In this document: positions 5,060 through 60,940 of the stretch, one piece after another
Layout of the letters: each line of letters begins with the position of its first letter
Position numbering within the stretch: the stretch's first letter is position 1
Assembly: GCF_006345805.1 (NCBI RefSeq)
Contig: NC_043000.1
Span: forward strand, 27,342,001 to 27,406,000
DNA: 64,000 nucleotides
Reading direction: 5' to 3'
DNA from: Octopus sinensis
Taxonomy: Eukaryota
The notes under the pieces: generated by a model
What the model saw: the letters and a program-made list of their open reading frames with translations, nothing else
What the model was told of the DNA's origin: nothing
Database searches by the model: none
Program-made: the position numbers and the translations under genes

Positions 5060-5296
5060 TACCTATTTCTTTACTACCCACAAGGGGCTAAACACAGAGA
5101 GGACAAAAAAGGACAGACAAACGGATTAAGTTGATTATATCGACCCCAGTGCGTAACTGGTACTTATTTAATCGACCCCGGAAGGATGAAAGGCAAAGTC
5201 GACCTCGGCGGAATTTGAACTCAGAACGTAACGGCAGACGAAATACTGCTAAGCATTTCGCCCGGCGTGTTAACGTTTCTTCCAGCTCGCCGCCTT
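5060..5296 (-). mobile_element. tRNA-derived SINE-A, full length
   Basis: Head AAGGCGGCGAGCTGG, B-box GAGTTCAAATTCC, central GCCTTTCATCCTTCCGGGGTCGA; homologous to 13226, 25925 and 51787. Confidence 0.85.
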
Positions 5297-7515
5297 GTAT
5301 AAACAGAATACCATTAATGAACCTAGGTCTGATACAATGTATAAATCTCACTCTTATTAATTATGTGTCGTATTTTTATTATTTTTATCAAGTTATTCTT
5401 CCCAAATTGTATTTCATAAGGCACTAACTTATTACTTATTCATAGTCATAGAAATACCATGAAGTAGAGATATATTCAATGAAAAGACATATTCTCTATG
5501 GGTGATTGTTAAATTCAGATGAAAGGAAAGGAGTAAAGGGATAAGAACGGTGAAAAATGAAAGAAAATAAACCGATATCAAATAGGAAACAACTTTAAGT
5601 TGAGTAAAAAATGGAAATATGGAGTTTGGATGTCTAGGCATTCCGAACAGTAAATAACAATGCAAAGAAACGGTAACAATATTATTGTCGCTGTGAGCTG
5701 ATGACCTTTTGCTACACAAGACAACTGACTACGATAATATTGTTATATAAGCATATGCATATGCACAACCATATTTCATAAATGCAATTCATATTTATAC
5801 ACACAATCGGCAATGCGTCATTCAGACACATATTCACATGTATAATTCAAGTTATTGATATTAGCTGTTTCTTAAATGTCGCATCGTTCATATTTAAAAC
5901 ATCGACTATATTTCGTCTTCGTCTCACCGTTGTCTAGCAATTGTACTACACCATCCAGATTCCGCTAAACCAAGAAATATATTTCTTTGGAACATACTCG
6001 TAGTTTGTATTTATTTGATCTGTAGTAGTTATGATTAGGAATAATGTGAAAGTCACGTGTTTCATTTGCAGTTATTTTGAAAATAACGATAGGAAAATGC
6101 AAAGATTCAGGTTCTAACTACTGACAGGAGACGCATTCGAAGCACCAGATGTTCCACAAGTCAGCTCTTCTGAAACCAAACATTATATTCTTGAAGTGGG
6201 CAGACTGCAAGCAACCTCGTCTTTGAAACTGTATTCTACACTCCTGGATATTTCCCGACAGGGATTTAAAAAATTTTCACATACATCCTATCTCCCAAAC
6301 ACCACTAAAAGTTTTGTCAATTTTAGTTCCAGTGTCAGTCTTAACACACAATATAGTATTCATAAACTACCCTTCAGTCAATATAACTACTCTTAACACA
6401 CATAAGCTACCTTTCTGCCTGTTTCACTTCTAACTTATACATAGATGCAAACTGTAAAACTTTCTCTCATCGTCCAACCCAACAAAAATAAACGGTCCCT
6501 ATGACCTTGTTGATACTATCAAATGATACGTTTCGGTACTAGTCTATATTCTTTCCAATCTTTTAAAGGATCAAATCCGTTCTTTGCACATGTGAAAATG
6601 TTTTTCACCTTTTCTTGACCATGTAAATCTATTCAGTCTCTCACAAATCTCGAATACAAGTTTAGTATGGCCATAATTACGGAAGATTTACACGGCCACG
6701 TCACACTCCACTCATATATTCAACCCATGGAACTAAAAAAAGAATTATGTTGTCTGTGGTTGACATCTGACATACGACATTTCTACGTATATTGATTGCC
6801 TAAATTTGGCATTTAACTGATTTTTATGTCGTCTCATACCATATTCCTTTTATAAATTAATAATCTTCTTCCTGTTACTTCTTACAATATACATTCCCTT
6901 ATAGATATAATATCAATTTTCACCCACCCTTCTACAAACGTCATTTCAGCCAACCGCCTACAAGCGTCAACCATTACACTTCATGCAAAACGTACACTTC
7001 TTCCATGAAATTTCACACCCGATACACTCGTCACATTCAGTGTCTCACTTCTCATATTCAGCGCTAAACGTTTCGTTCATCGTATCACCCCGAAGTTGGA
7101 ACCTTCTGGAATTACTTATGTGCCAATATAATTCCTACAGAGGTCATTACAGCAATTCGCATTAAAAATTAACTACATCATCCTCTAAGCAGTCTGGACG
7201 AACACCTTCGTCTCTCATTAATTAATAATGAAAAACACTCGTCACCATTTCTACTCAGATATACAAATATTATGAACCAGTACACCTTGTCTTCACACTT
7301 TCCAATGAAGAACTTAGTGTTTATACATACACAAATGCACGTACGCATACTTACACACTCGGAGCAATGTATTATGTTTCATATTAATTACGCACACGCA
7401 CACACACACACATTCATACACACATACGCATGCATACATACTCGCAGGCACACAAAATACACATACACACAAACACACATACACGGGCACACACGTTTTA
7501 TTACACTGCAATATA

Positions 7516-10347: not shown

Positions 10348-10549
10348 AAGGCGTAGGAGTGGCTGTGTGGTAAGTATCTTGCTTACGAACCCCATGGCTC
10401 CAGTTTCAGTCCCACTGCGTGGCACCTTGGACAAGTGTCTTCTACTACAGCCTCGGGCTGACCAAAGCCTGTGAGTGGATTTGGTAGATGGAAACTGAAA
10501 GAAGCCCGTCGTATATATGTATATATATATTATATATATATATATTATA

Positions 10550-10592
<43 letters not shown>

Positions 10593-10825
10593 ATATGTAT
10601 GTATGTGTGTGTGTGCGTGTGTGTATGTTTGTGTGTCTGTGCTTGTCCCGCCAACATCACTTGACAAGTGGTGTGTTTAAGTCCCCGTAACTTAGCGGTT
10701 CGGCAAAAGAGACAGATCGAATAAGTACTAGGCTTACAAAGAATAAGTCCTGGGGTCGATTTGCTCGACTAAAGGTGGTGCTCCAGCATGACCACAGTCA
10801 AATGACTGAAACATGTAAAAGAGTA
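10348..10825 (+). mobile_element. tRNA-derived SINE-B, full length with internal (TA)n(TG)n tract
   Basis: Head GGCGTAGGAGTGGCTGTGTGG, body ...GGAAACTGAAAGAAGCCC, microsatellite, tail ...GCTCCAGCATG..TGACTGAAACA..TAAAAGA; multiple homologs in the window. Confidence 0.85.
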
Positions 10826-11649
10826 TTTAAAAAAAATTTGTTATTTTTTTCCTGTTTAAAACAATCACCGAATTTCTATCACTCTTTCACCCATTCGCGC
10901 AAGTAGCGCTCGTTCAAAACATTTCGCTTGAAACCACTTGAGCATTTCATGTTTTTAGTAATCACACGTCCATGCGCTACTAAAAATATAACATTGAGAA
11001 GCCTATATTAAAATGTAGATAAGAGATGACAATTAGCGAATGCTTATATATTTCTCTGGCTAAAATAATATTTCTACGGAGTTTTCGTTTCAACTCAGAT
11101 ATTTTAAATATGTACCGTTATAAATCCTTAGACGCCTTTGATAACGATTAATTTCGAAAAAAGATTGCTTTCTAATATATGTAAATTTAGCATTGGCAGT
11201 GAGAAGTCGAATGCATTATGATGCCGATATGAGAATAATTACTTCCCACACATAGCGAAACATCGATATTACTACCAAATTCTACACGATTTTCAAGTCT
11301 TGTTAGATTCGGATAACAGCGTATAATTTACAAAATTTTACAGAATACCCCGAGGCAGTATTTCTTGAACGAATATCTTTGAGCCTTAGCAAGGAATTTA
11401 CATTCCGCAACGCTAAAAATTCAAGCCCTTATTACTTAGAATAAAGAGTATATCTATGTCGTTAGTAATAATGGTTGGAATTTAAAACGCCTGTTGTAAA
11501 CTGTTGGAGGCGGTTTATGCAAAAACAAGAGAATGAGGATGATAATAAGGCACTCTTCAGAGGATAGAGAGGATGGCAAGTTGGGATTGGAGGAAAGTGG
11601 CGCAGTTCTGTTGTTTGATATAAAAATGTTTAATGTTCGTGCTCAGTAA

Positions 11650-13225: not shown

Positions 13226-13640
13226 AGGCGGCGAGCTGGCAGAAACTTTAGCACGCCGGGCGAAGTGCGTAGCCGTATTTCGTCTGTCGTTACGTTCTGA
13301 TTTCAAATTCTGCCGAGGTCGACTTTGCCTTTCATCCTTTCGGGGTCAATAAATGAAGTACCAGTTTCGCACTGGGGTCGATATAATCGACTTAATCCGT
13401 TTGTCTGTTCTTGTTTGTCCTCTGTGTTTAGCCCCTTGTTGGTAGTAAAGAAACGGGTATTTCGTCTGCCGTTACGTTCTGAGTTCAAATTCCGCCGAGA
13501 TCGACTTTGCATTTCATCCTTTCGGGGTCGATTAAATAAGTACCAGTTACGCACTGGAGTCGATGTAATCGACATAATCCGTTTGTTTGTCCTTGTTTGT
13601 CCCGTCTATGTTTAGCCCCTTGCGGGCAATAAAGAAATAA
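13226..13640 (+). mobile_element. SINE-A with tandemly duplicated 182-bp body
   Basis: GTATTTCGTCTG starts at 13275 and 13457; flanked by 21-bp direct repeat TCTTATACAGT(A/T)TAACTAGTA at 13200-13220 and 13641-13661. Confidence 0.85.
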
Positions 13641-21967: not shown

Positions 21968-22038
<71 letters not shown>

Positions 22039-22042
22039 CTAG

Positions 22043-22148
22043 GTACTTGCTTCGAAAGTACATATACTAAAAATTGGAACGATACAGAGAAGAATAACAT
22101 GGCCCCTGCGGGAGAATGACGCGCAAATTCGTGAAGCGTTCCATATTT
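22043..22148 (+). pseudogene. U6: U6 snRNA retropseudogene, full length
   Basis: GTACTTGCTTCG...CATATACTAAAAATTGGAACGATACAGAGAAG...GAAGCGTTCCATATTT; ACAGAGA box at 22084-22090; about 9 differences from canonical U6 as recalled, including catalytic AGC to AAC; no upstream promoter. Confidence 0.95.
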
Positions 22149-22220
22149 CTCTAGCCAGGTGGTGCTAACTTAATACACATGGCCTGGGCCAATACTGGCC
22201 AAAATACTGGCTAAGTTTTA
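22149..22220 (+). mobile_element. CR1 3' tail fused to U6
   Basis: CAGGTGGTGCTA..ACATGGCCTGGGCCAAT..TGGCC.AAA..CTAAGTTTTA matches the CR1 terminus at 42721-42790 (reverse complement). Confidence 0.8.
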
Positions 22221-22234
22221 TATGTATATATATA

Positions 22235-22278
<44 letters not shown>

Positions 22279-22282
22279 TATA

Positions 22283-22483
22283 GTTCATCCAAACATGAAC
22301 AAGAACGAAAAAACATCGCGAGAAATAAGCACGTGGAATAAGCAGTCTTATTGGACACTCAGGAAAGGATAGAAAAGAAAGATCATTGCACGTTTTGAGC
22401 GGAGCTTCTCATCAGAAATACAGAAAAAGTCCCAAAAAGGGAAGACGGAGAAACAAAATCGCCAACGATACACACGCAGTCAC
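22283..22483 (-). mobile_element. Family P1 short element with degenerate hammerhead
   Basis: Minus strand TTT-CTGATGA-GAAGC-TCC-GCTC-AAAAC-GTG at ~22386-22420. Confidence 0.65.
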
Positions 22484-22790
22484 GAGCCATTGTGCCCGAG
22501 ATATGACTAAAAGACTTCAGCAGTTGGTGCTTTTAAGTTAGATATGGGTTGGGCCTATAATGGCCCAAAGCTTAGCAAATTATATATATATATATATGTA
22601 TATATGTATGAATATATACACATACACAGACATATATATATATATATATATTATAATGTGCATAATATATATATATATATATCAGGATTTTGAGACCCAG
22701 TCGCAGTACCTGGCCCGCCTGTTAAGGCATCAAGTATACCTCCAACCCTTTTCCAAACACATACATATATATATCTTTATATAGAATATA

Positions 22791-22869
22791 GACTTAATCT
22801 TTGTAAGCCTAGTACTTATAACGGCCTCATTTGCCGAACCGCGAGCTTAGGGGGACAAACACAGACATA
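22791..22869 (-). mobile_element. SINE-B fragment
   Basis: tttgtaagcctagtactta...gccgaaccgc matches SINE-B 3' half. Confidence 0.6.
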
Positions 22870-22897
22870 ATTACATACATACATGCATATATATATA

Positions 22898-23145
22898 TAA
22901 AACTTAGATAAAACTTAGATATGTTTCGACCAGAGATTGGTCCAGGCCATGTCTAACTTAATAGCACCACCTGATAGGATTATTCGAATCCTGTTTAAGT
23001 CAAGTTTTGTTCAAGTAGTGAGTTCTTGTCGGGTGAGTTGTATCCAATTATGGGTGGCTTATCTGGTATTCTTTGAAGGAATCTATCCAGACTCTGTTTG
23101 AAGTTGATGGGATCTTTTTCCTCTTTGATCTCCCTCGGGACAATG

Positions 23146-23149
<4 letters not shown>
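22898..23149 (-). mobile_element. 5'-truncated CR1 LINE (3' 250 bp) in (TA)n
   Basis: Near-identical to 42721-43005; (TA)n on both sides; terminal TCTAAGTTTTA unit doubled. Confidence 0.9.
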
Positions 23150-23195
<46 letters not shown>

Positions 23196-25924: not shown

Positions 25925-26151
25925 TATATATCTTATGTTTTTTACTGTCCACAGAGGGGAGAAACAATGACAGACAAACGGATTGTCGATTATATCGACC
26001 CCAGTGCGTAAGTGGTACTTATCTAATCGACCCCCAAAAGATGAAAGGCAAAGTCGACCTCGGCAGAATTTAAACTCGGAACGTAAGGACAAACGAAATA
26101 CTGTTAAGCATTTCGCCCGGCGTGTTATCGTTTCTGCCAGCTCGCCGCCTT
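25925..26151 (-). mobile_element. SINE-A
   Basis: Homologous to 5060-5296. Confidence 0.85.
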
Positions 26152-29376: not shown

Positions 29377-29530
29377 AATAATAACATCGAAAATTACCTT
29401 AGGAATGAGAAACCAGGTTCAAAATTTCTCCAAGACACCTGATGAAGGCTGGAGGGTATATCAGCCGAAACTTTATGCTAACCATAAACAAGCTGCTAAC
29501 TACAAATATCCGTCAAATGTAAATAATGTA
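29377..29530 (+). mobile_element. Family P3 short hammerhead-bearing element
   Basis: Starts AATAATAACATCGAAAA; GACAC-CTGATGA-A-GGCTG-loop-CAGCC-GAAAC at 29434-29471; homologs at 54991 and 58414. Confidence 0.75.
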
Positions 29531-34776: not shown

Positions 34777-34952
34777 ATGTTTTAATTTTAAGGCCAGAAA
34801 TAAAAGGGCAAATATCTACAAAAGAATTGATGTTAGGGATGATATAAGGAGAATGAAGTCGCATCGACAACAATCATAATTTTTTGTTACAAATGATATA
34901 TATGGTGATGGTAATCAAAATAACGGATGGATATAGTAACCTTAGATGCAAC

Positions 34953-34992
<40 letters not shown>

Positions 34993-34996
<4 letters not shown>

Positions 34997-35185
34997 TAAT
35001 CCAAACAAGAAAGCACAAAAAACACAACAATGCGAGGACGTGGAACAAATATAGTATTATTGGACGCTCAGGAAAGAAGGAGAGTTTAACGTTTCGAGCA
35101 GAGCTCTTCGGCGGAAACAGATGAGAAGGAAAGATCCAGAGAAGGGAAGGCAGAGGAAAAAAATCGCCAACGGTACACACGAGGT

Positions 35186-35188
<3 letters not shown>
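34993..35188 (-). mobile_element. Family P1 short element with hammerhead-like motif
   Basis: Minus strand GTTT-CCGCCGAA-GAGC-TCT-GCTC-GAAAC-GTT-AAAC at 35084-35119. Confidence 0.7.
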
Positions 35189-35230
<42 letters not shown>

Positions 35231-35829
35231 GTGTATATATATATTTATATGTATATTTATATGTATGGGGCTAAAAAGTCACATTCGATCACAGCACCAG
35301 TAACAGTTAAGCTTCGTGCAATGGCCATACTCGATAACGAGGGGGCAGCCATAATAATATATGTATATGGATATGTGTATGTATGTGTGTATATGTATGT
35401 TAAAAGAAGAAACATGTACAGTTTACATAGTTTTGATATATCTTGAATGAAAGAAGATTGTGGTTGCCGACCAGTTTCGTTTTCGCTAAAGATGACATTG
35501 AAAATATAGTAATTTTGCATTTTCTTAAAATTTTAGTCCAAGTTCCTGTATGAGAGTTTGTGAATGAATCAACAAGTAGAAAAATGTAAGGGGAGGTAAC
35601 TGGTGATAGTTATCATTCGGGGCAGGGCAAATAATTACTCAATTTTTGTTTCGGATATATAAACATTCAAAACTCATAAGTTAAAATAGTGAGATGGATA
35701 TGTGGTCAGGAAATAAAATATATACTGAGACCAAAGTTGGTTATACGTTCATATTTAGGCGTGTTCTGTATTTTACGTAAATAAGTATTCTTTATTTTAA
35801 CGTTCTTGTACAGAAATTGCTTCTTTGCA

Positions 35830-39382: not shown

Positions 39383-39755
39383 TAAAAACTTATATAAGAA
39401 TTAAATATCTTTCGACCGAAGATTGGTCCAGGCCACGGCTAACTTAATACCACTATCTGATAGGATTATATAAGTCCATTTTAAGTCAAGTTTGGTGGTA
39501 TCGTGGTCCATTTGAGTAGGGACTTCTTGTTAAGTGAGTTGTATGCAAGTATAGATGGCTTATCTGGTATTCCTTGAAGACATTTGTCCAGATTCCGTTG
39601 AAAGGTGATGCGGTCATATTACCCTTTGATCAGTTTTGGAAGTATGTTGCCGTGTAAATTATGCGTTGTGATCCTGCATTGGGTAGGGGCCATGGTCCTT
39701 GCCTTGGATGAATTTTGAAGATAAGTGTCCTTTGGGCATTGCTAGCGGTATATTC
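39383..39755 (-). mobile_element. CR1 3' fragment, diverged subfamily
   Basis: Aligns to 42721-43140; GGCCTGGACCAAT..GGTCGAAA tail; abuts (TA)n. Confidence 0.85.
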
Positions 39756-39877
39756 TCCAATTCGCTTAAACTATGTATCGCTCGCGGTGGTGCAGGAGAG
39801 AATAGTTACAATATCGTAAGGCGGATATATACATACATACATACATACATACATACATACATACATACATACATACA

Positions 39878-42574: not shown

Positions 42575-45429
<2,855 letters not shown>

Positions 45430-45607
45430 TTAGCCACTACACACATTTTTCTCTATCCTTCTTTCTCTCCTTGCTTTTTCTGTGTCCCTTTCTGTAGAAG
45501 TGCGTAAGCTCGAAACGTAAAAGACATTCCTGAGCGTTATACTAATACATCTGTTTGTCTTGTACCCCACCTGTCTTTGTCTTTTGTTTTTTTCGTAAAC
45601 TCTCCCT
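45430..45607 (+). mobile_element. Family P2 short element with zero-loop hammerhead motif
   Basis: CTTT-CTGTAGAA-GTGC-GTAA-GCTC-GAAAC-GTA-AAAG at 45488-45523. Confidence 0.65.
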
Positions 45608-45738
45608 ATATATATATTTATATACATACACACGCAGGCACACACACATATATTAGATAATAAATCGCATGTTATACACCTGGTAACTTACCCGTAAACA
45701 CGTTCACTGTCACAGTGTTTCTTGGAATTTGATTATTT

Positions 45739-51786: not shown

Positions 51787-52038
51787 AACGGAAGACGAAA
51801 TACCTGTAACTATTTCTTTAGTATCCACAAGGAGCTAAACATAGAGAGGACAAACATGGACAGACAACCGAATAAAGTCGATTATATCGACCTCAGTGCG
51901 TAACTGGTACTTAACTTATCGACGCTGAAAGAATGAAAGGCAAAGTCGACCTCAGCGGAATTTGAACTCAGAACGTAACGGTAGACAAAATACAGCTAAG
52001 CATTTCGCCCGGCGTGTTAACGTATCTGCCAGCTCGCT
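51787..52038 (-). mobile_element. SINE-A with start of a second body unit
   Basis: Homologous to 5060-5296; extra aacggaagacgaaatacc beyond the tail. Confidence 0.8.
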
Positions 52039-52045
52039 TTCTTTA

Positions 52046-55430: not shown

Positions 55431-56080
55431 TAAATATATTTGTATATACATACATGTCCCCGAAATATGTGATCCACAAGAGTTCGGCTCTATCACACAA
55501 TGTGAAAATTAGTATATTAATAGCTGACTTAGAATAATGAAAAACATACCCCACTCCCTGTGCAAACATTGGGAGGAATAGAAACACACACAAGACTTCA
55601 TGCATCTTCATGCAAAGAAAACAAAGAGAAAACCAACACTGCTATCTTATGCATACGAAAAATAACATAGTATTTAAAACACGCACACACACTCACACAC
55701 ACATACGTATGCAAACACTTATGGATAAACACACGCACATTCAGACATATGCAGACATACACACACTCACATACTTATCTCGGACAGATCTCGGACAAAT
55801 CCCAACAGTAGAACATAAGTTCAACGGAAATGGCAGTAGAGGAGATTGCGACAATGCGATGAAACAATTATTTGACAAAGAAATGAAAACACTAACAATA
55901 CTGAACATTGGAACGATTAACTGTTTGACCAAAGTGTTTGACCAAAGTGTTTGAAAAACTAGTAAAAAAACGGCTGATCGATAAATTGGTTAACTAAGTA
56001 ACTAACCCATTAACTAACAATAACAGAAAAGGACCAAACCAGTGCATGTGTTTATTAATACCGGAAATAATGCCGCTAAC

Positions 56081-56252
56081 ACACGACGGGCTACTTTCAG
56101 CTTCCATCTGCCAAACCCACACAAAAGGCTTTGGTCGGCTCGAGGCTATATTAAAACAACACACTTGCCCAAGATGTTCCACGCAGTGGGATTGAAGCCG
56201 GAAACGTGCGGTTGGGAAGTAAGCTTCTTACCACACAGCTTCGCTTGCACCT
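56081..56252 (-). mobile_element. SINE-B 5' half
   Basis: acgacgggct..ctttggtcggctcgaggctata..cttcttaccacacagc. Confidence 0.8.
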
Positions 56253-56599
56253 TTGTTCAGAGACATTAAGTTTCAAATATATAATATATAGAAGTAAAAT
56301 TTAATCTGAAAGAACGAGTATCTTAAAGAGGATAACGCCACTCAGTACACACGGTATTACAGAGATTATTCGTCACGCAGCAGTGACACAATCTAGTCAG
56401 AGATTAAAAAATCATATTGAGAATTAAAACGTGAAACCAAAGAAGACAAATACAATTTGTGACATAAAAACTATTTGCATTTTCCATTCTCGGCCAATTT
56501 TTAAAAAGTTCCAATCAACGATAAATATTTAGAAAAATATGATTAAAAAAAGGACAGGAAAAAATAGAAAAATATGCGAAAAAGATTTTGTAGGAAATT

Positions 56600-56992
56600 T
56601 CTTTTCTTTTCATTTAATTCTTGCAGTCATTTGACGGTGGCCATGCTGTATGATCGTCTTTCGTCGAGCAAATCGACCCCAGAGTTTATTCTTTGTAAGA
56701 CAAGTACGTATTTTATCGGTATCTTTCGCCGAACCACTAGGTTAGGGGGACGCAAACAAACTAGCATTGGTTGTTGTCAAGCAATGGCGGTGGGACAAAC
56801 ACAGGTACACGAACACGCGCACGCGCACACACAAATATCTTTTAGTTTCCGTCTGCCAAATCCACACACAAGGCTTTGGTCGACACGAGGCTGAAGCAGA
56901 AGACACTTGCCCAAGTTGCTAAGCAGTGGGACTTAACCCGGATCCATGTGGTTGGTGAATAAGCCACTTACTACAAAGCCACCCCTGCGCCT
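56600..56992 (-). mobile_element. SINE-B, full length
   Basis: Reverse complement aligns with 10348-10825. Confidence 0.8.
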
Positions 56993-57042
56993 ATATGTCT
57001 AATATTTCAGTTGTGTATTTAACCACTACGCCATATGCCCAT

Positions 57043-58413: not shown

Positions 58414-58562
58414 AATAACATCGAAAAATACCTTAGGAATGAGAACCCAGGTTCGAAATTTCCCCAACACACCTGATGAATGCCGAGGTATATCAGCCGA
58501 AACGTTCTGTTAACAACAAACAAGATGAGGACAAATATCCGTCAAATGTAAATAATGTAAAC
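58414..58562 (+). mobile_element. Family P3 hammerhead-bearing element
   Basis: CACAC-CTGATGA-A..CAGCC-GAAAC-GTT-CTGTT at 58468-58511; follows the Dong (AAT)n tail. Confidence 0.75.
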
Positions 58563-59682: not shown

Positions 59683-60940
59683 TATTGGGTTGGCAACTAA
59701 GTTCCCACCGTTTTTTAAAATTTGAATTTTTGAAAAAGCCCCATTAAAAAAGAACAACTAATTAATCAATAATGTATTCATTCTTGTTGTTTACAACTTC
59801 TCAAAGTTCATCACGATTTTCAATACCTCATTGGTAGAAATCACCCGATTGCGACTTGAAAAATTGATCCATCCAAGCTCTCAATTCTACATCAGTATTG
59901 AACCAAACTCCGCGCATAGAATTTGAAAGAGATCTATGGAGGTGGAAATCCGTTGGTGCCAAACCAAGAGAGTGTGATGGGTGTGTCAGCACTTCCCAGC
60001 CATACGTTTGAATGACTTCCTAGGTCATATTGGCGATATGGGGGCGGACGTTGCCGAGCAACAGAAGAACTCCATGCTGCCGATTAGGTCTTTTCTCTTG
60101 AATAGCCGTGTTGATTCGTTCCATCTGTTGAACATAGAGTTCCGCCTTGACCGTTTGGTTCCGTTTAAGCAATTCGTAATGGATAATCCCTTCCCAGTCC
60201 CACTATACGCACAACATCGTTTTACGTGGATGACTGTATTGTTTCACGCGCGGTGTCGCTTGTTTACCGGGGTTAAGCAATTCCTTACGCTGTTTCATAC
60301 TATTCGGTAAAGAAATCGTTGTTTGTAACCATGAGTTGAGCAGTGACGAGCAAGCAAACCAGCGGATATTGTGACACGTTGATTTTTGTCGTAATCACTT
60401 AAAGCATGCGGAATCCATGCTCCATACTTCTGAACCTTTCCCATCGAGTGACGATGCTCCTCTATAGTGGTGTGGGGGCATTCAATTTTCATTCCATTTC
60501 CCTTGTCGTTTGACGAGATTTTCGTGCAAATTTGGTTCAATCGCTCTGCATCGAACTCAACTGGACGACCAGAACGAGGTGCTTTTTTGAGGTCAAAATT
60601 TCGATTTTTGAACTTGGAATACGAATCACGAGCAGTTATTTCAGCTATTGCATACACAGCACAAATATCGCGAATAGATTTTGCGGCCTTAGAACCTTGA
60701 TAAAAAAGCAAAAAGAAGGAGGCGTCGAAAATGCTCATTTTTTCTTAATTTGACATTCCATTTTAAGGATCTGAAAATAAACAAAAATTTACTAAAATTA
60801 ACTAGAAAAAAAGCAACAAAATAGATTCGAAAATGATTCAAAAATAGAATTTGCGGAAAAAATAGATTCAAAATTTTTTAAAATGCAATAAATTCCAAAA
60901 TCAAGAATAAAATAGCGGGAACTTAGTTGTCAACCCAATA
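59683..60940 (-). mobile_element. Mariner transposon, full length, degenerate
   Basis: TIRs TATTGGGTTGGCAACTAAGTTCCC / GGGAACTTAGTTGTCAACCCAATA; transposase PRSGRP and WIPHAL motifs; frameshifted. Confidence 0.9.

What the first reader, a model, noticed from the sequence alone, without database searches (positions are those of the whole stretch)
22043..22220. U6 snRNA-CR1 chimeric retrogene (possible U6-headed SINE)
Seen: a complete U6 joined at its 3' U-tract (TTT-CT) to ~70 bp homologous to the CR1 3' terminus, ending CTAAGTTTTA and embedded in (TA)n like the CR1 copies here. Established: U6-L1 chimeras are known in mammals and attributed to template switching or RtcB ligation of U6 2',3'-cyclic phosphate to 5'-OH L1 RNA; snRNA-headed SINEs (SINEU, from U1/U2) occur in crocodilians. 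Inference: a CR1-clade equivalent in a mollusc, which I have not seen described. With a constant junction it would be a new SINE class; with variable junctions it would be recurrent chimera formation. HHR cleavage yields the same end chemistry, so RtcB could link this to the HHR system. Caveat: CTAG occurs on both sides of U6, so U6 insertion into a pre-existing CR1 stub is an alternative.
Basis: partly seen in the sequence, partly recalled or inferred. Interest (0 to 1): 0.9.

Follow-up and report, generated by a model that had tools for sequence, protein, structure and literature searches.

The report
U6 snRNA fused to LINE tail
A dead copy of the spliceosomal U6 RNA is joined head-to-tail to the last ~67 bases of an octopus CR1-like jumping gene. 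This kind of by-product of LINE reverse transcription is already known from vertebrates, so it is a modest extension to a new animal group, and no evidence here shows it to be a new class of mobile element.

Summary
Window 22043-22150 (+) is a complete U6 (Rfam 87.3 bits, model 1-105). It runs without a Pol III terminator (TTTCT) into about 67 nt (22154-22220) homologous to the 3' end of a CR1-like LINE family. That family has intact and truncated copies in the same window (86% identity, z = 17 against shuffles). Its Octopus sinensis relative shares an identical 27-nt hairpin block. The tail keeps both conserved hairpins and the terminal CTAAGTTTTA unit. Like every LINE copy here, it sits inside (TA)n.

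The U6 part is decayed: 9 substitutions and 1 insertion, AGC triad now AAC, no upstream promoter. It is a retro-pseudogene, most simply made in one event by the LINE reverse transcriptase, through template switch or a pre-ligated RNA.

SINE status could not be tested. There is one copy in 64 kb, none in about 42 kb of other octopod DNA, and no access to a whole genome.

The novelty claim is overstated. U6 chimeras with tail-specific ("stringent") LINEs are published: L2 in platypus, L2 and RTE in Anolis, and one uncertain CR1 case in turkey. None is reported from molluscs in the library searched. I found no evidence for the proposed hammerhead/RtcB link.

Verdict: a new member of a known kind, moderate interest.

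The parts
21968..22038 (.). Upstream (TA)36 microsatellite: the target-site flank.
   Evidence: TRF. All LINE-family copies in the window are embedded in (TA)n, although only 3-5% of the window is (TA)n.
22039..22042 (+). CTAG filler between (TA)n and U6 nucleotide 1. Origin unknown: extra nucleotides at the 5' junction, or chance.
   Evidence: Sequence. The same 4-mer recurs at 22151-22154.
22043..22150 (+). Full-length but decayed U6 snRNA copy (the head).
   Evidence: Rfam RF00026, 87.3 bits, model 1-105. It differs from a natural U6 with the same 5' stem (L009) by 9 substitutions and 1 insertion. These include AGC to AAC, GC to AA in the upper 5' stem, four changes in the ISL region, and TTTTT to TTTCT.
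22151..22153 (+). Junction nucleotides CTA of uncertain origin.
   Evidence: Octopod LINEs read ...ACTTC-GCCAGG at this point. Homology is secure only from G22154.
22154..22220 (+). CR1-like LINE 3' module (the tail). Hairpin 1 pairs 22155-22164 with 22178-22187. Hairpin 2 pairs GGCCA 22187-22191 with TGGCC 22196-22200. The terminal unit CTAAGTTTTA lies at 22211-22220 and holds the first T4 run after U6.
   Evidence: Identity is 86% to window LINE tails and 86% to the O. sinensis LINE tail, with 27 nt identical. Across six tails, 94.6% of cells are paired in the two-hairpin model, against 19-38% when partners are slid.
22221..22282 (.). Downstream (TA)32 microsatellite flank, shared with the next element (B).
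   Evidence: TRF; sequence.
22284..22583 (+). Comparator B: a short non-autonomous derivative of the same LINE group, made of LINE leader-like body plus CR1-type tail. A second copy, B2, lies at 34994-35187.
22898..23147 (-). Comparator C: a 5'-truncated LINE copy with (TA)n on both sides. The terminal unit TCTAAGTTTTA is repeated 2.3 times.
42721..45605 (-). Comparator D: the longest copy of the partner LINE, with an ORF at 43128-45446 carrying EEP and RT domains. Its tail is identical to C's.
39396..39800 (-). Comparator E: an older, degenerate copy of the same LINE family. Its 5' limit is approximate.

Best explanation
This is a processed chimeric pseudogene made in one retrotransposition event by a CR1-like, tail-specific LINE of an octopod.

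Proposed sequence of events:
1. The LINE reverse transcriptase began target-primed reverse transcription on the 3' module of its own RNA (two hairpins plus the terminal CTAAGTTTTA unit), at a nick in a (TA)n microsatellite.
2. About 67 nt in, it continued onto the 3' oligo-U end of a mature U6 snRNA. Either it switched templates, or the two RNAs had been ligated beforehand.
3. It copied U6 to its first nucleotide, and the cDNA was joined to the upstream (TA)n.

The copy has no promoter of its own. It has since decayed by about 10% and is not a working U6 gene. It is most likely one of a scattered set of independent chimeras, as in platypus and Anolis, and not a member of an amplifying family.

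Shown: the architecture, the homology of both halves, the retention of the LINE hairpins, the shared (TA)n context and the decay. Inferred: the single-event origin, the switch-or-ligation step, and non-amplification.
For: - Complete U6 in sense orientation, abutting the LINE tail within 3-5 nt, with no poly(A), no (TA)n and no LINE sequence between them or upstream.
- The tail is homologous to the authentic 3' terminus of the LINE family present in the window. That family has EEP and RT domains and near-identical young copies C and D. Its relatives occur in O. sinensis and Argonauta.
- The two-hairpin module is conserved, with compensatory G-C/A-U changes, and the chimera keeps it.
- The chimera has the same insertion context as the LINE copies: (TA)n on both sides of A, B, C and D, where 3-5% is expected by chance.
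- Head divergence (9 substitutions plus 1 indel in 107 nt) and tail divergence (9/66 plus indels) are similar. This is what one event followed by neutral decay would give.
- The catalytic AGC triad and the upper 5' stem are broken, so there has been no selection for U6 function.
- Published precedent: U6 chimeras formed by stringent LINEs, with short LINE parts and tiny or no TSDs (PMC4476161).
- No second copy in the window or in L001 and L007.
Against: - No target-site duplication can be read, because both flanks are (TA)n. The single-event origin is therefore inferred and not demonstrated.
- The LINE part is exactly the minimal recognition module. There is no terminator between head and tail, and a T4 sits at the very end of the tail. 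That is also what a Pol III-driven SINE would look like.
- An automated Octopus vulgaris repeat annotation lists uncharacterised 'SINE/U' (369 kb) and 'SINE/U-L1' (53 kb) families. For U-L1, two recent insertions total 353 bp, about 176 bp each, close to this element's 178 bp (PMC13282606).
- Only about 106 kb of octopod DNA could be examined, so the absence of further copies is weak evidence.
Confidence: 0.6

Rival explanations
1. It is one copy of an amplifying U6-headed, CR1-tailed SINE family. A master copy is transcribed from U6 nucleotide 1 through the mutated terminator to the T4 in the LINE terminal unit. The CR1-like LINE then mobilises that RNA through the two hairpins.
For: - The tail is just the minimal LINE module (about 67 nt), as in CR1-tailed tRNA SINEs (PMC5729268).
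- There is no T4 until the last bases of the tail.
- (TA)n upstream gives a TATA-like sequence around -30.
- The O. vulgaris annotation lists SINE/U and SINE/U-L1 families, the latter with a per-copy size close to this element.
- Octopus genomes hold more than 1,000 unclassified SINE families.
- snRNA-headed SINEs exist (SINEU, PMC4494074).
Against: - Only one copy was seen in about 106 kb of octopod DNA, whereas the non-autonomous B element occurs twice in the window.
- Animal U6 promoters lie upstream and are not carried by a retrocopy (established knowledge). Upstream of this copy there is only (TA)n.
- The single T-to-C change in the terminator is one of about 10 apparently random changes. 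At 9% divergence, a hit on one of the three central Ts is expected roughly 25% of the time (my estimate).
- The 5'-stem 'compensatory' pair is a natural U6 variant, found in 86 metagenome contigs, and so is no sign of selection.
- The held library has no paper containing the phrase 'U6-derived SINE'.
Confidence: 0.25
2. Two independent events. A 67-bp 5'-truncated LINE stub was already in the (TA)n tract. A U6 retro-pseudogene later inserted at its 5' edge, duplicating CTAG.
For: - CTAG occurs immediately before U6 and immediately after it (22039-22042 and 22151-22154).
- Short truncated LINE copies exist here: C is 250 bp.
Against: - U6 carries no poly(A), microsatellite or LINE tail of its own that a LINE enzyme could have primed on.
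- No LINE sequence lies upstream of U6, so the insertion would have had to hit the first 4 nt of the stub, in the same orientation.
- G22154 of the second CTAG is part of the LINE homology (GCCAGG in O. sinensis). The apparent repeat is therefore partly LINE sequence, and a 4-nt match is weak.
- Stringent LINEs are reported to form U6 pseudogenes only as chimeras (PMC4476161).
Confidence: 0.07
3. It is a functional variant U6 gene, or a misassembly, that happens to lie next to a LINE fragment.
For: - Full-length U6 with an intact ACAGAGA box and 3' half.
- A TATA-like (TA)n lies upstream.
Against: - AGC triad mutated to AAC, four changes in the ISL region, upper 5' stem broken, and no T4 terminator.
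- The 75 bp upstream are pure (TA)n, with no room for a proximal sequence element.
- The junction is clean, and the tail has the same context as other LINE copies, which argues against an assembly artefact.
Confidence: 0.02

Closest known systems
U6/LINE chimeric retro-pseudogenes formed by stringent LINEs in vertebrates: U6-L2/Mon-1 in platypus, U6-L2, U6-RTE and U6-AnolisSINE2 in Anolis, and one unresolved U6-CR1 case in turkey (Doucet et al. 2015, PMC4476161).
   Same: - U6 in sense orientation directly 5' of a short 3'-terminal piece of a tail-specific LINE.
- No poly(A).
- The LINE ends in a simple repeat.
- TSDs are tiny or unreadable.
- Best explained by the LINE RT continuing from its own RNA onto U6.
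   Different: - The host is a cephalopod mollusc and the partner is an octopod LINE with CR1-type architecture that inserts in (TA)n.
- U6 here is full length, whereas nearly all platypus U6-L2 chimeras have 5'-truncated U6.
- The only CR1 case in that paper was left unresolved.
U6/L1 chimeras of mammals (Buzdin 2002; Garcia-Perez 2007; Cell Genomics 2026, PMC13174262).
   Same: - Full-length U6 in sense orientation, joined at its 3' U-tract to a 5'-truncated LINE.
- The same two candidate mechanisms apply: template switching, or RtcB ligation before reverse transcription.
   Different: - L1 is a relaxed, poly(A)-dependent LINE with clear 7-20 bp TSDs and a TT/AAAA target.
- Here the partner recognises its own hairpin tail and the target is (TA)n.
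SINEU of crocodilians (Kojima 2015, PMC4494074).
   Same: - An snRNA-derived head on a LINE-mobilised short retroposon.
- The head carries no internal promoter.
- Target preference is shared with the partner LINE.
   Different: - SINEU heads are U1 and U2 (Pol II genes), and the partner is Tx1-Mar of the L1/Tx1 group.
- SINEU are proven multi-copy families with subfamilies and shared deletions. None of that is shown here.
CR1-tailed tRNA SINEs of passerines, TguSINE1 and PittSINE (Suh et al. 2017, PMC5729268).
   Same: - The tail is a CR1 hairpin (RT binding site) plus a terminal short repeat.
- The head is proposed to have been acquired by template switching.
   Different: Those heads are tRNAs with internal A and B boxes, and thousands of copies exist.

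Membership tests
U6/LINE template-switch chimeric retro-pseudogene | U6 in sense orientation immediately 5' of a 5'-truncated LINE 3' end. | tested here: met
   U6 spans 22043-22150 (+) and the LINE tail 22154-22220 (+), with 3 nt between them.
U6/LINE template-switch chimeric retro-pseudogene | The U6 part reaches its native 3' oligo-U end, so there was no internal initiation. | tested here: met
   The Rfam alignment runs to model position 105/105. The sequence ends ...CCATATTTCT.
U6/LINE template-switch chimeric retro-pseudogene | The LINE part runs to the authentic LINE 3' terminus. | tested here: met
   It ends CTAAGTTTTA followed by (TA)n, exactly as LINE copies C and D do.
U6/LINE template-switch chimeric retro-pseudogene | The whole unit is bounded by one target-site duplication or one insertion signature. 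| tested here: inconclusive
   Both flanks are (TA)n. This matches the LINE family's insertion context but hides any TSD.
U6/LINE template-switch chimeric retro-pseudogene | An empty orthologous or allelic site lacks both parts together. | not testable with these tools
   No genome of the source species or a sister species is searchable by DNA. Scans of metagenome, GTDB and viral collections found nothing.
SINE (snRNA-headed, SINEU-like) | Many copies with a constant head-tail junction and shared diagnostic mutations. | tested here: inconclusive
   One copy in the 64-kb window and none in 42 kb of Argonauta and O. sinensis DNA. This sample is far too small to exclude a family with fewer than about 10,000 copies.
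SINE (snRNA-headed, SINEU-like) | The tail is shared with a partner LINE in the same genome. | tested here: met
SINE (snRNA-headed, SINEU-like) | The element carries or acquires a promoter, classically an internal Pol III promoter. | tested here: inconclusive
   Animal U6 genes use upstream promoter elements (established knowledge). Here only (TA)n lies upstream. No transcription data are available.
Functional U6 snRNA gene | Invariant catalytic elements (ACAGAGA, the AGC triad, the ISL) and a T4-5 terminator. | tested here: not met
   ACAGAGA is intact, but AGC is now AAC, there are four changes in the ISL region, and TTTTT is now TTTCT.
CR1-clade LINE (the partner element) | An ORF2 with an EEP endonuclease and a reverse transcriptase. 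| tested here: met
   Pfam PF14529, PF03372 and PF00078 on 43128-45446 (-). It is 47% identical over 746 aa to 1000-aa relatives.
CR1-clade LINE (the partner element) | A 3' UTR hairpin followed by a short tandem repeat at the terminus, with no poly(A). | tested here: met
   The two hairpins are conserved across six tails. The terminal unit is repeated: TCTAAGTTTTA x2.3 in the window, (TCTAAGTA)3 in Argonauta and (TTCTAAGTTA)2 in O. sinensis.
CR1-clade LINE (the partner element) | RT phylogeny places it with CR1 reference elements and not with L2, Rex1 or other related clades. | not tested
   No reference set of classified LINE RTs was available. 'CR1-like' therefore rests on domain content and tail architecture only.

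The most novel reading that the evidence does not exclude
The element could be a copy of a true U6-headed SINE whose life cycle depends on its partner's target choice. Because the CR1-like LINE inserts into (TA)n, every new copy would land with a TATA-like tract about 5-75 bp upstream of U6 nucleotide 1. That could partly replace the external U6 promoter. The lost U6 terminator would let Pol III read into the LINE hairpins, and the T4 in the terminal CTAAGTTTTA unit would end the transcript at the LINE's own 3' end. This would be the first SINE class built on a type-3 Pol III gene.
Probability: 0.15. Interest if true: 0.75.

Novelty: new member of a known kind. Interest (0 to 1): 0.38.

Why it matters
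If confirmed as a single-event chimera, it extends the pairing of U6 with stringent LINEs from amniotes to a lophotrochozoan. It would also give the first clean case with a LINE of CR1-type architecture, since the turkey case was left unresolved. That supports the view that U6 capture is a general, ancient side-reaction of non-LTR reverse transcription, and that it supplies raw material for SINE birth.

Counts of such chimeras could serve as markers of LINE activity in cephalopod genomes, where LINE activity in the brain is under discussion.

Only if a constant-junction family exists would this become a new SINE class. That question is cheap to settle with one genome-wide search.

Tried and rejected
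Searches that found nothing:
- The U6-tail junction as a gapped pattern in JGI metagenome contigs, IMG/VR and GTDB genomes: 0 hits.
- The 27-nt octopod tail block in GTDB and IMG/VR: 0 hits. No octopod DNA is reachable by DNA pattern.
- A protein-route trick, using the open frame through U6 and the junction as a query against 5.8 billion predicted proteins: no candidate.
- A look-up of the window's own LINE ORF: not on record. The source genome is not in the collection.

Searches that gave little:
- Contigs fetched via LINE protein hits yielded only about 42 kb of octopod DNA (Argonauta L001, O. sinensis L007). The other contigs came from unrelated animals with different tails. None holds a U6.

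Ideas rejected:
- That the A3-U17 pair in the 5' stem is a compensatory change showing selection. The same stem is a natural U6 variant in 86 metagenome contigs.
- That element B carries a hammerhead ribozyme on its antisense strand. Rfam finds nothing there even at E = 10.
- The Rfam low-threshold scan of the window. It gave only microsatellite-driven miRNA false positives besides U6.

Literature:
- The held library has no paper with the phrase 'U6-derived SINE' and none combining U6 snRNA, chimera, non-LTR and mollusc terms.

Full report
**What is there**

Rfam finds exactly one RNA family above threshold in the 64-kb window. It is a complete U6 snRNA at 22043-22150 on the + strand (87.3 bits, gathering score 44, model positions 1-105 of 105). 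A permissive re-scan adds only microsatellite-driven miRNA false positives.

The U6 ends ...CCATATTTCT instead of the usual TTTTT. After three bases (CTA) it continues into GCCAGGTGGTGCTAACTTAATACACATGGCCTGGGCCAATACTGGCCAAAATACTGGCTAAGTTTTA, which is followed by (TA)32. A (TA)36 tract plus CTAG lies directly upstream of U6 nucleotide 1.

**The tail is a real LINE 3' end**

The window holds a 2.9-kb LINE copy, D (42721-45605, -). Its 772-aa ORF has Exo_endo_phos_2, Exo_endo_phos and RVT_1 domains and is 47% identical over 746 residues to 1000-aa relatives.

A 250-bp 5'-truncated copy, C, lies at 22898-23147 (-). Apart from a 43-bp duplication in D, it differs from D by 3 mismatches in about 240 aligned bases. 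The last 70 bases of the two copies are identical. An older copy, E, lies near 39396-39800.

The chimera's tail aligns colinearly with the C/D terminus at 57/66 positions. The alignment score is 36, against 4.1 +/- 1.9 for 2000 dinucleotide shuffles (z = 16.9). A profile of the tails finds five tails in the window and nothing else.

The same tail type ends a related LINE in Argonauta hians (L001, 75% identity) and in Octopus sinensis (L007, 86% over 66 nt). In O. sinensis the 27-nt block CATGGCCTGGGCCAATACTGGCCAAAA is identical to the chimera.

In all these LINEs the terminus is a short tandem unit: TCTAAGTTTTA x2.3 in the window, (TCTAAGTA)3 in Argonauta and (TTCTAAGTTA)2 in O. sinensis. Two hairpins precede it. 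On six distinct tails, 94.6% of cells pair in the two-hairpin model, against 19-38% when partners are slid. Two pairs show changes on both sides.

This is the hairpin-plus-microsatellite architecture described for CR1 (PMC5729268). I did not run an RT phylogeny, so 'CR1-like' rests on domains and tail architecture alone.

**Organism**

The best named protein relatives come from Argonauta hians and Octopus sinensis. Several short repeats in the window are 85-89% identical to copies on an O. sinensis scaffold. The window is therefore from an octopod. The species' own genome is not in the protein or contig collection.

**Insertion context**

Only 3-5% of the window is (TA)n. Even so, the chimera, the short element B, and LINE copies C and D have (TA)n on both sides, and B2 has it on its 5' side. 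Three insertions (chimera, B and C) sit within 1.1 kb of one (TA)n-rich stretch.

The LINE family therefore inserts preferentially into (TA)n, and the U6 chimera shares that signature. The drawback is that no target-site duplication can be read.

**State of the U6 part**

I compared it with a natural U6 that has the same 5' stem (metagenome locus L009). The copy has 9 substitutions and 1 insertion in 107 nt:

- GC to AA in the upper 5' stem.
- An extra A in the A-run.
- AUUAGC to AAUAAC, which destroys the AGC triad.
- Four changes in the GCGCAAGGAUGACACGC region.
- U to C in the terminator.

The A3-U17 pair looks compensatory against human U6. It is in fact a common natural variant: 86 metagenome contigs carry exactly that 5' half, most of them ordinary genes ending in TTTTT. 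It says nothing about selection.

Head divergence (about 9%) and tail divergence (about 14% plus indels) are of the same order. This fits one event followed by neutral decay.

**How it most likely arose**

Three facts matter here. U6 has no tail of its own. No LINE sequence lies upstream of it. A stringent LINE enzyme needs its own 3' module to start. The economical reading is therefore a single target-primed reverse transcription. It began on the LINE 3' module and continued onto U6, either by template switch or because the RNAs had been ligated first. The sequence cannot distinguish these two routes.

The 3-5 junction bases and the upstream CTAG are unexplained. They could be extra nucleotides added at template jumps, diverged LINE sequence (octopod LINEs read ACTTCGCCAGG at this point), or chance.

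That requires a tail-less U6 cDNA to land in the first four bases of a 67-bp stub, in the same orientation. The final G of the second CTAG also belongs to the LINE homology. I give this about 7%.

**SINE or not**

Features that would suit a SINE:

- A minimal tail.
- No terminator between head and tail.
- A T4 at the extreme 3' end.
- A TATA-like tract upstream.
- An automated O. vulgaris repeat annotation listing uncharacterised 'SINE/U' (369,490 bp) and 'SINE/U-L1' (52,753 bp) families. For U-L1, two recent insertions total 353 bp, close to twice this element's 178 bp.

Points against:

- There is a single, decayed copy in the window and none in the other 42 kb of octopod DNA I could fetch.
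- U6 promoters are external.
- The terminator change is one of about ten apparently random substitutions.

Kojima's criteria for telling a family from a sum of independent chimeras are shared internal changes, subfamilies, and a tail not matched by abundant LINE copies (PMC4494074). They cannot be applied without a genome. Here the tail does match abundant LINE copies, which by his argument favours independent chimeras. I put the SINE reading at about 25%.

**Comparison with what is known**

Doucet et al. 2015 (PMC4476161) already showed otherwise:

- 40 U6 chimeras with L2 or its SINE Mon-1 in platypus, with short L2 parts and TSDs of 1-9 bp.
- U6 chimeras with L1, L2, RTE and AnolisSINE2 in Anolis.
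- One unresolved U6-CR1 case in turkey.

The present element fits that class on every feature I could test. What is new is the phylum, a clean case with a LINE of CR1-type architecture, and a full-length U6. I found no paper in the held library describing U6-LINE chimeras in molluscs.

**The proposed hammerhead/RtcB connection**

No evidence bears on it. The only hammerhead-like cores in the window are at 29439-29471 and 58473-58503. They are kilobases away and fall below Rfam's gathering scores. A hammerhead-like motif I suspected on the antisense strand of element B is not supported.

**Verdict**

The interpretation as a U6-LINE chimeric retrocopy is supported. SINE status is untested and less likely. 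The claimed novelty shrinks to a new member of a known kind. One genome-wide U6 search would settle the open point.

Noticed in passing
window 22284-22583 (+) and 34994-35187 (+): These are two copies of a short non-autonomous element with the same 5' end. The body is homologous to the ~160-bp leader upstream of LINE D's start codon, and it is joined directly to a CR1-type tail. This is an internally deleted LINE derivative of the Bov-A kind. The second copy has lost its tail to a (CA)n/(TA)n tract.
   Followed up: partly
window 42721-45605 (-): The longest LINE copy is only 2.9 kb. Its ORF starts at about residue 117 of 1000-aa relatives, so the first half of the endonuclease is missing. It has a frameshift near the C-terminus and a 43-bp tandem duplication. 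Even so, its tail is identical to that of truncated copy C, and the two copies are almost identical overall. This suggests recent activity of a defective lineage, presumably mobilised in trans.
   Followed up: partly
window 21968-23193, 34950-35240, 42660-42720, 45605-45640: Every copy of this LINE family and its derivatives lies inside (TA)n, although (TA)n covers only 3-5% of the window. The family appears to target (TA)n microsatellites.
   Followed up: partly
window 29439-29471 (+) and 58473-58503 (+): Two hammerhead-like cores (CTGATGA...CAGCCGAAAC) sit in nearly identical flanking sequence, so they are probably part of a repeated element. Neither reaches an Rfam gathering score.
   Followed up: no
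L017 (PJEL010091600.1) and L023 (PJEL010160271.1): In two metagenome contigs a U6 with a perfect 5' half breaks off at about nt 65-70 and continues into unrelated sequence. They may be 3'-truncated U6 retrocopies or chimeras in an unidentified eukaryote.
   Followed up: no
L035, L049, L060, L062, L081, L085-L087 (JAAUXU/JAAUYM/JAAUYK/JAAUYG contigs): Several contigs of one metagenome project begin or end within a few bases of a U6 gene. This suggests U6 sits in a repeated unit there that breaks the assembly.
   Followed up: no
window 10350-10830 and other sites (5130-5300, 13230-13580, 25985-26150, 51880-52040, 56080-57020): Multi-copy short repeats are 77-89% identical to repeats on an Octopus sinensis scaffold (L007). 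This was the best clue to the window's origin.
   Followed up: partly
window 60295-60738 (-): A 147-aa ORF whose sequence looks, by eye, like the N-terminus of a mariner-type transposase. It has no Pfam hit at E <= 0.001.
   Followed up: no
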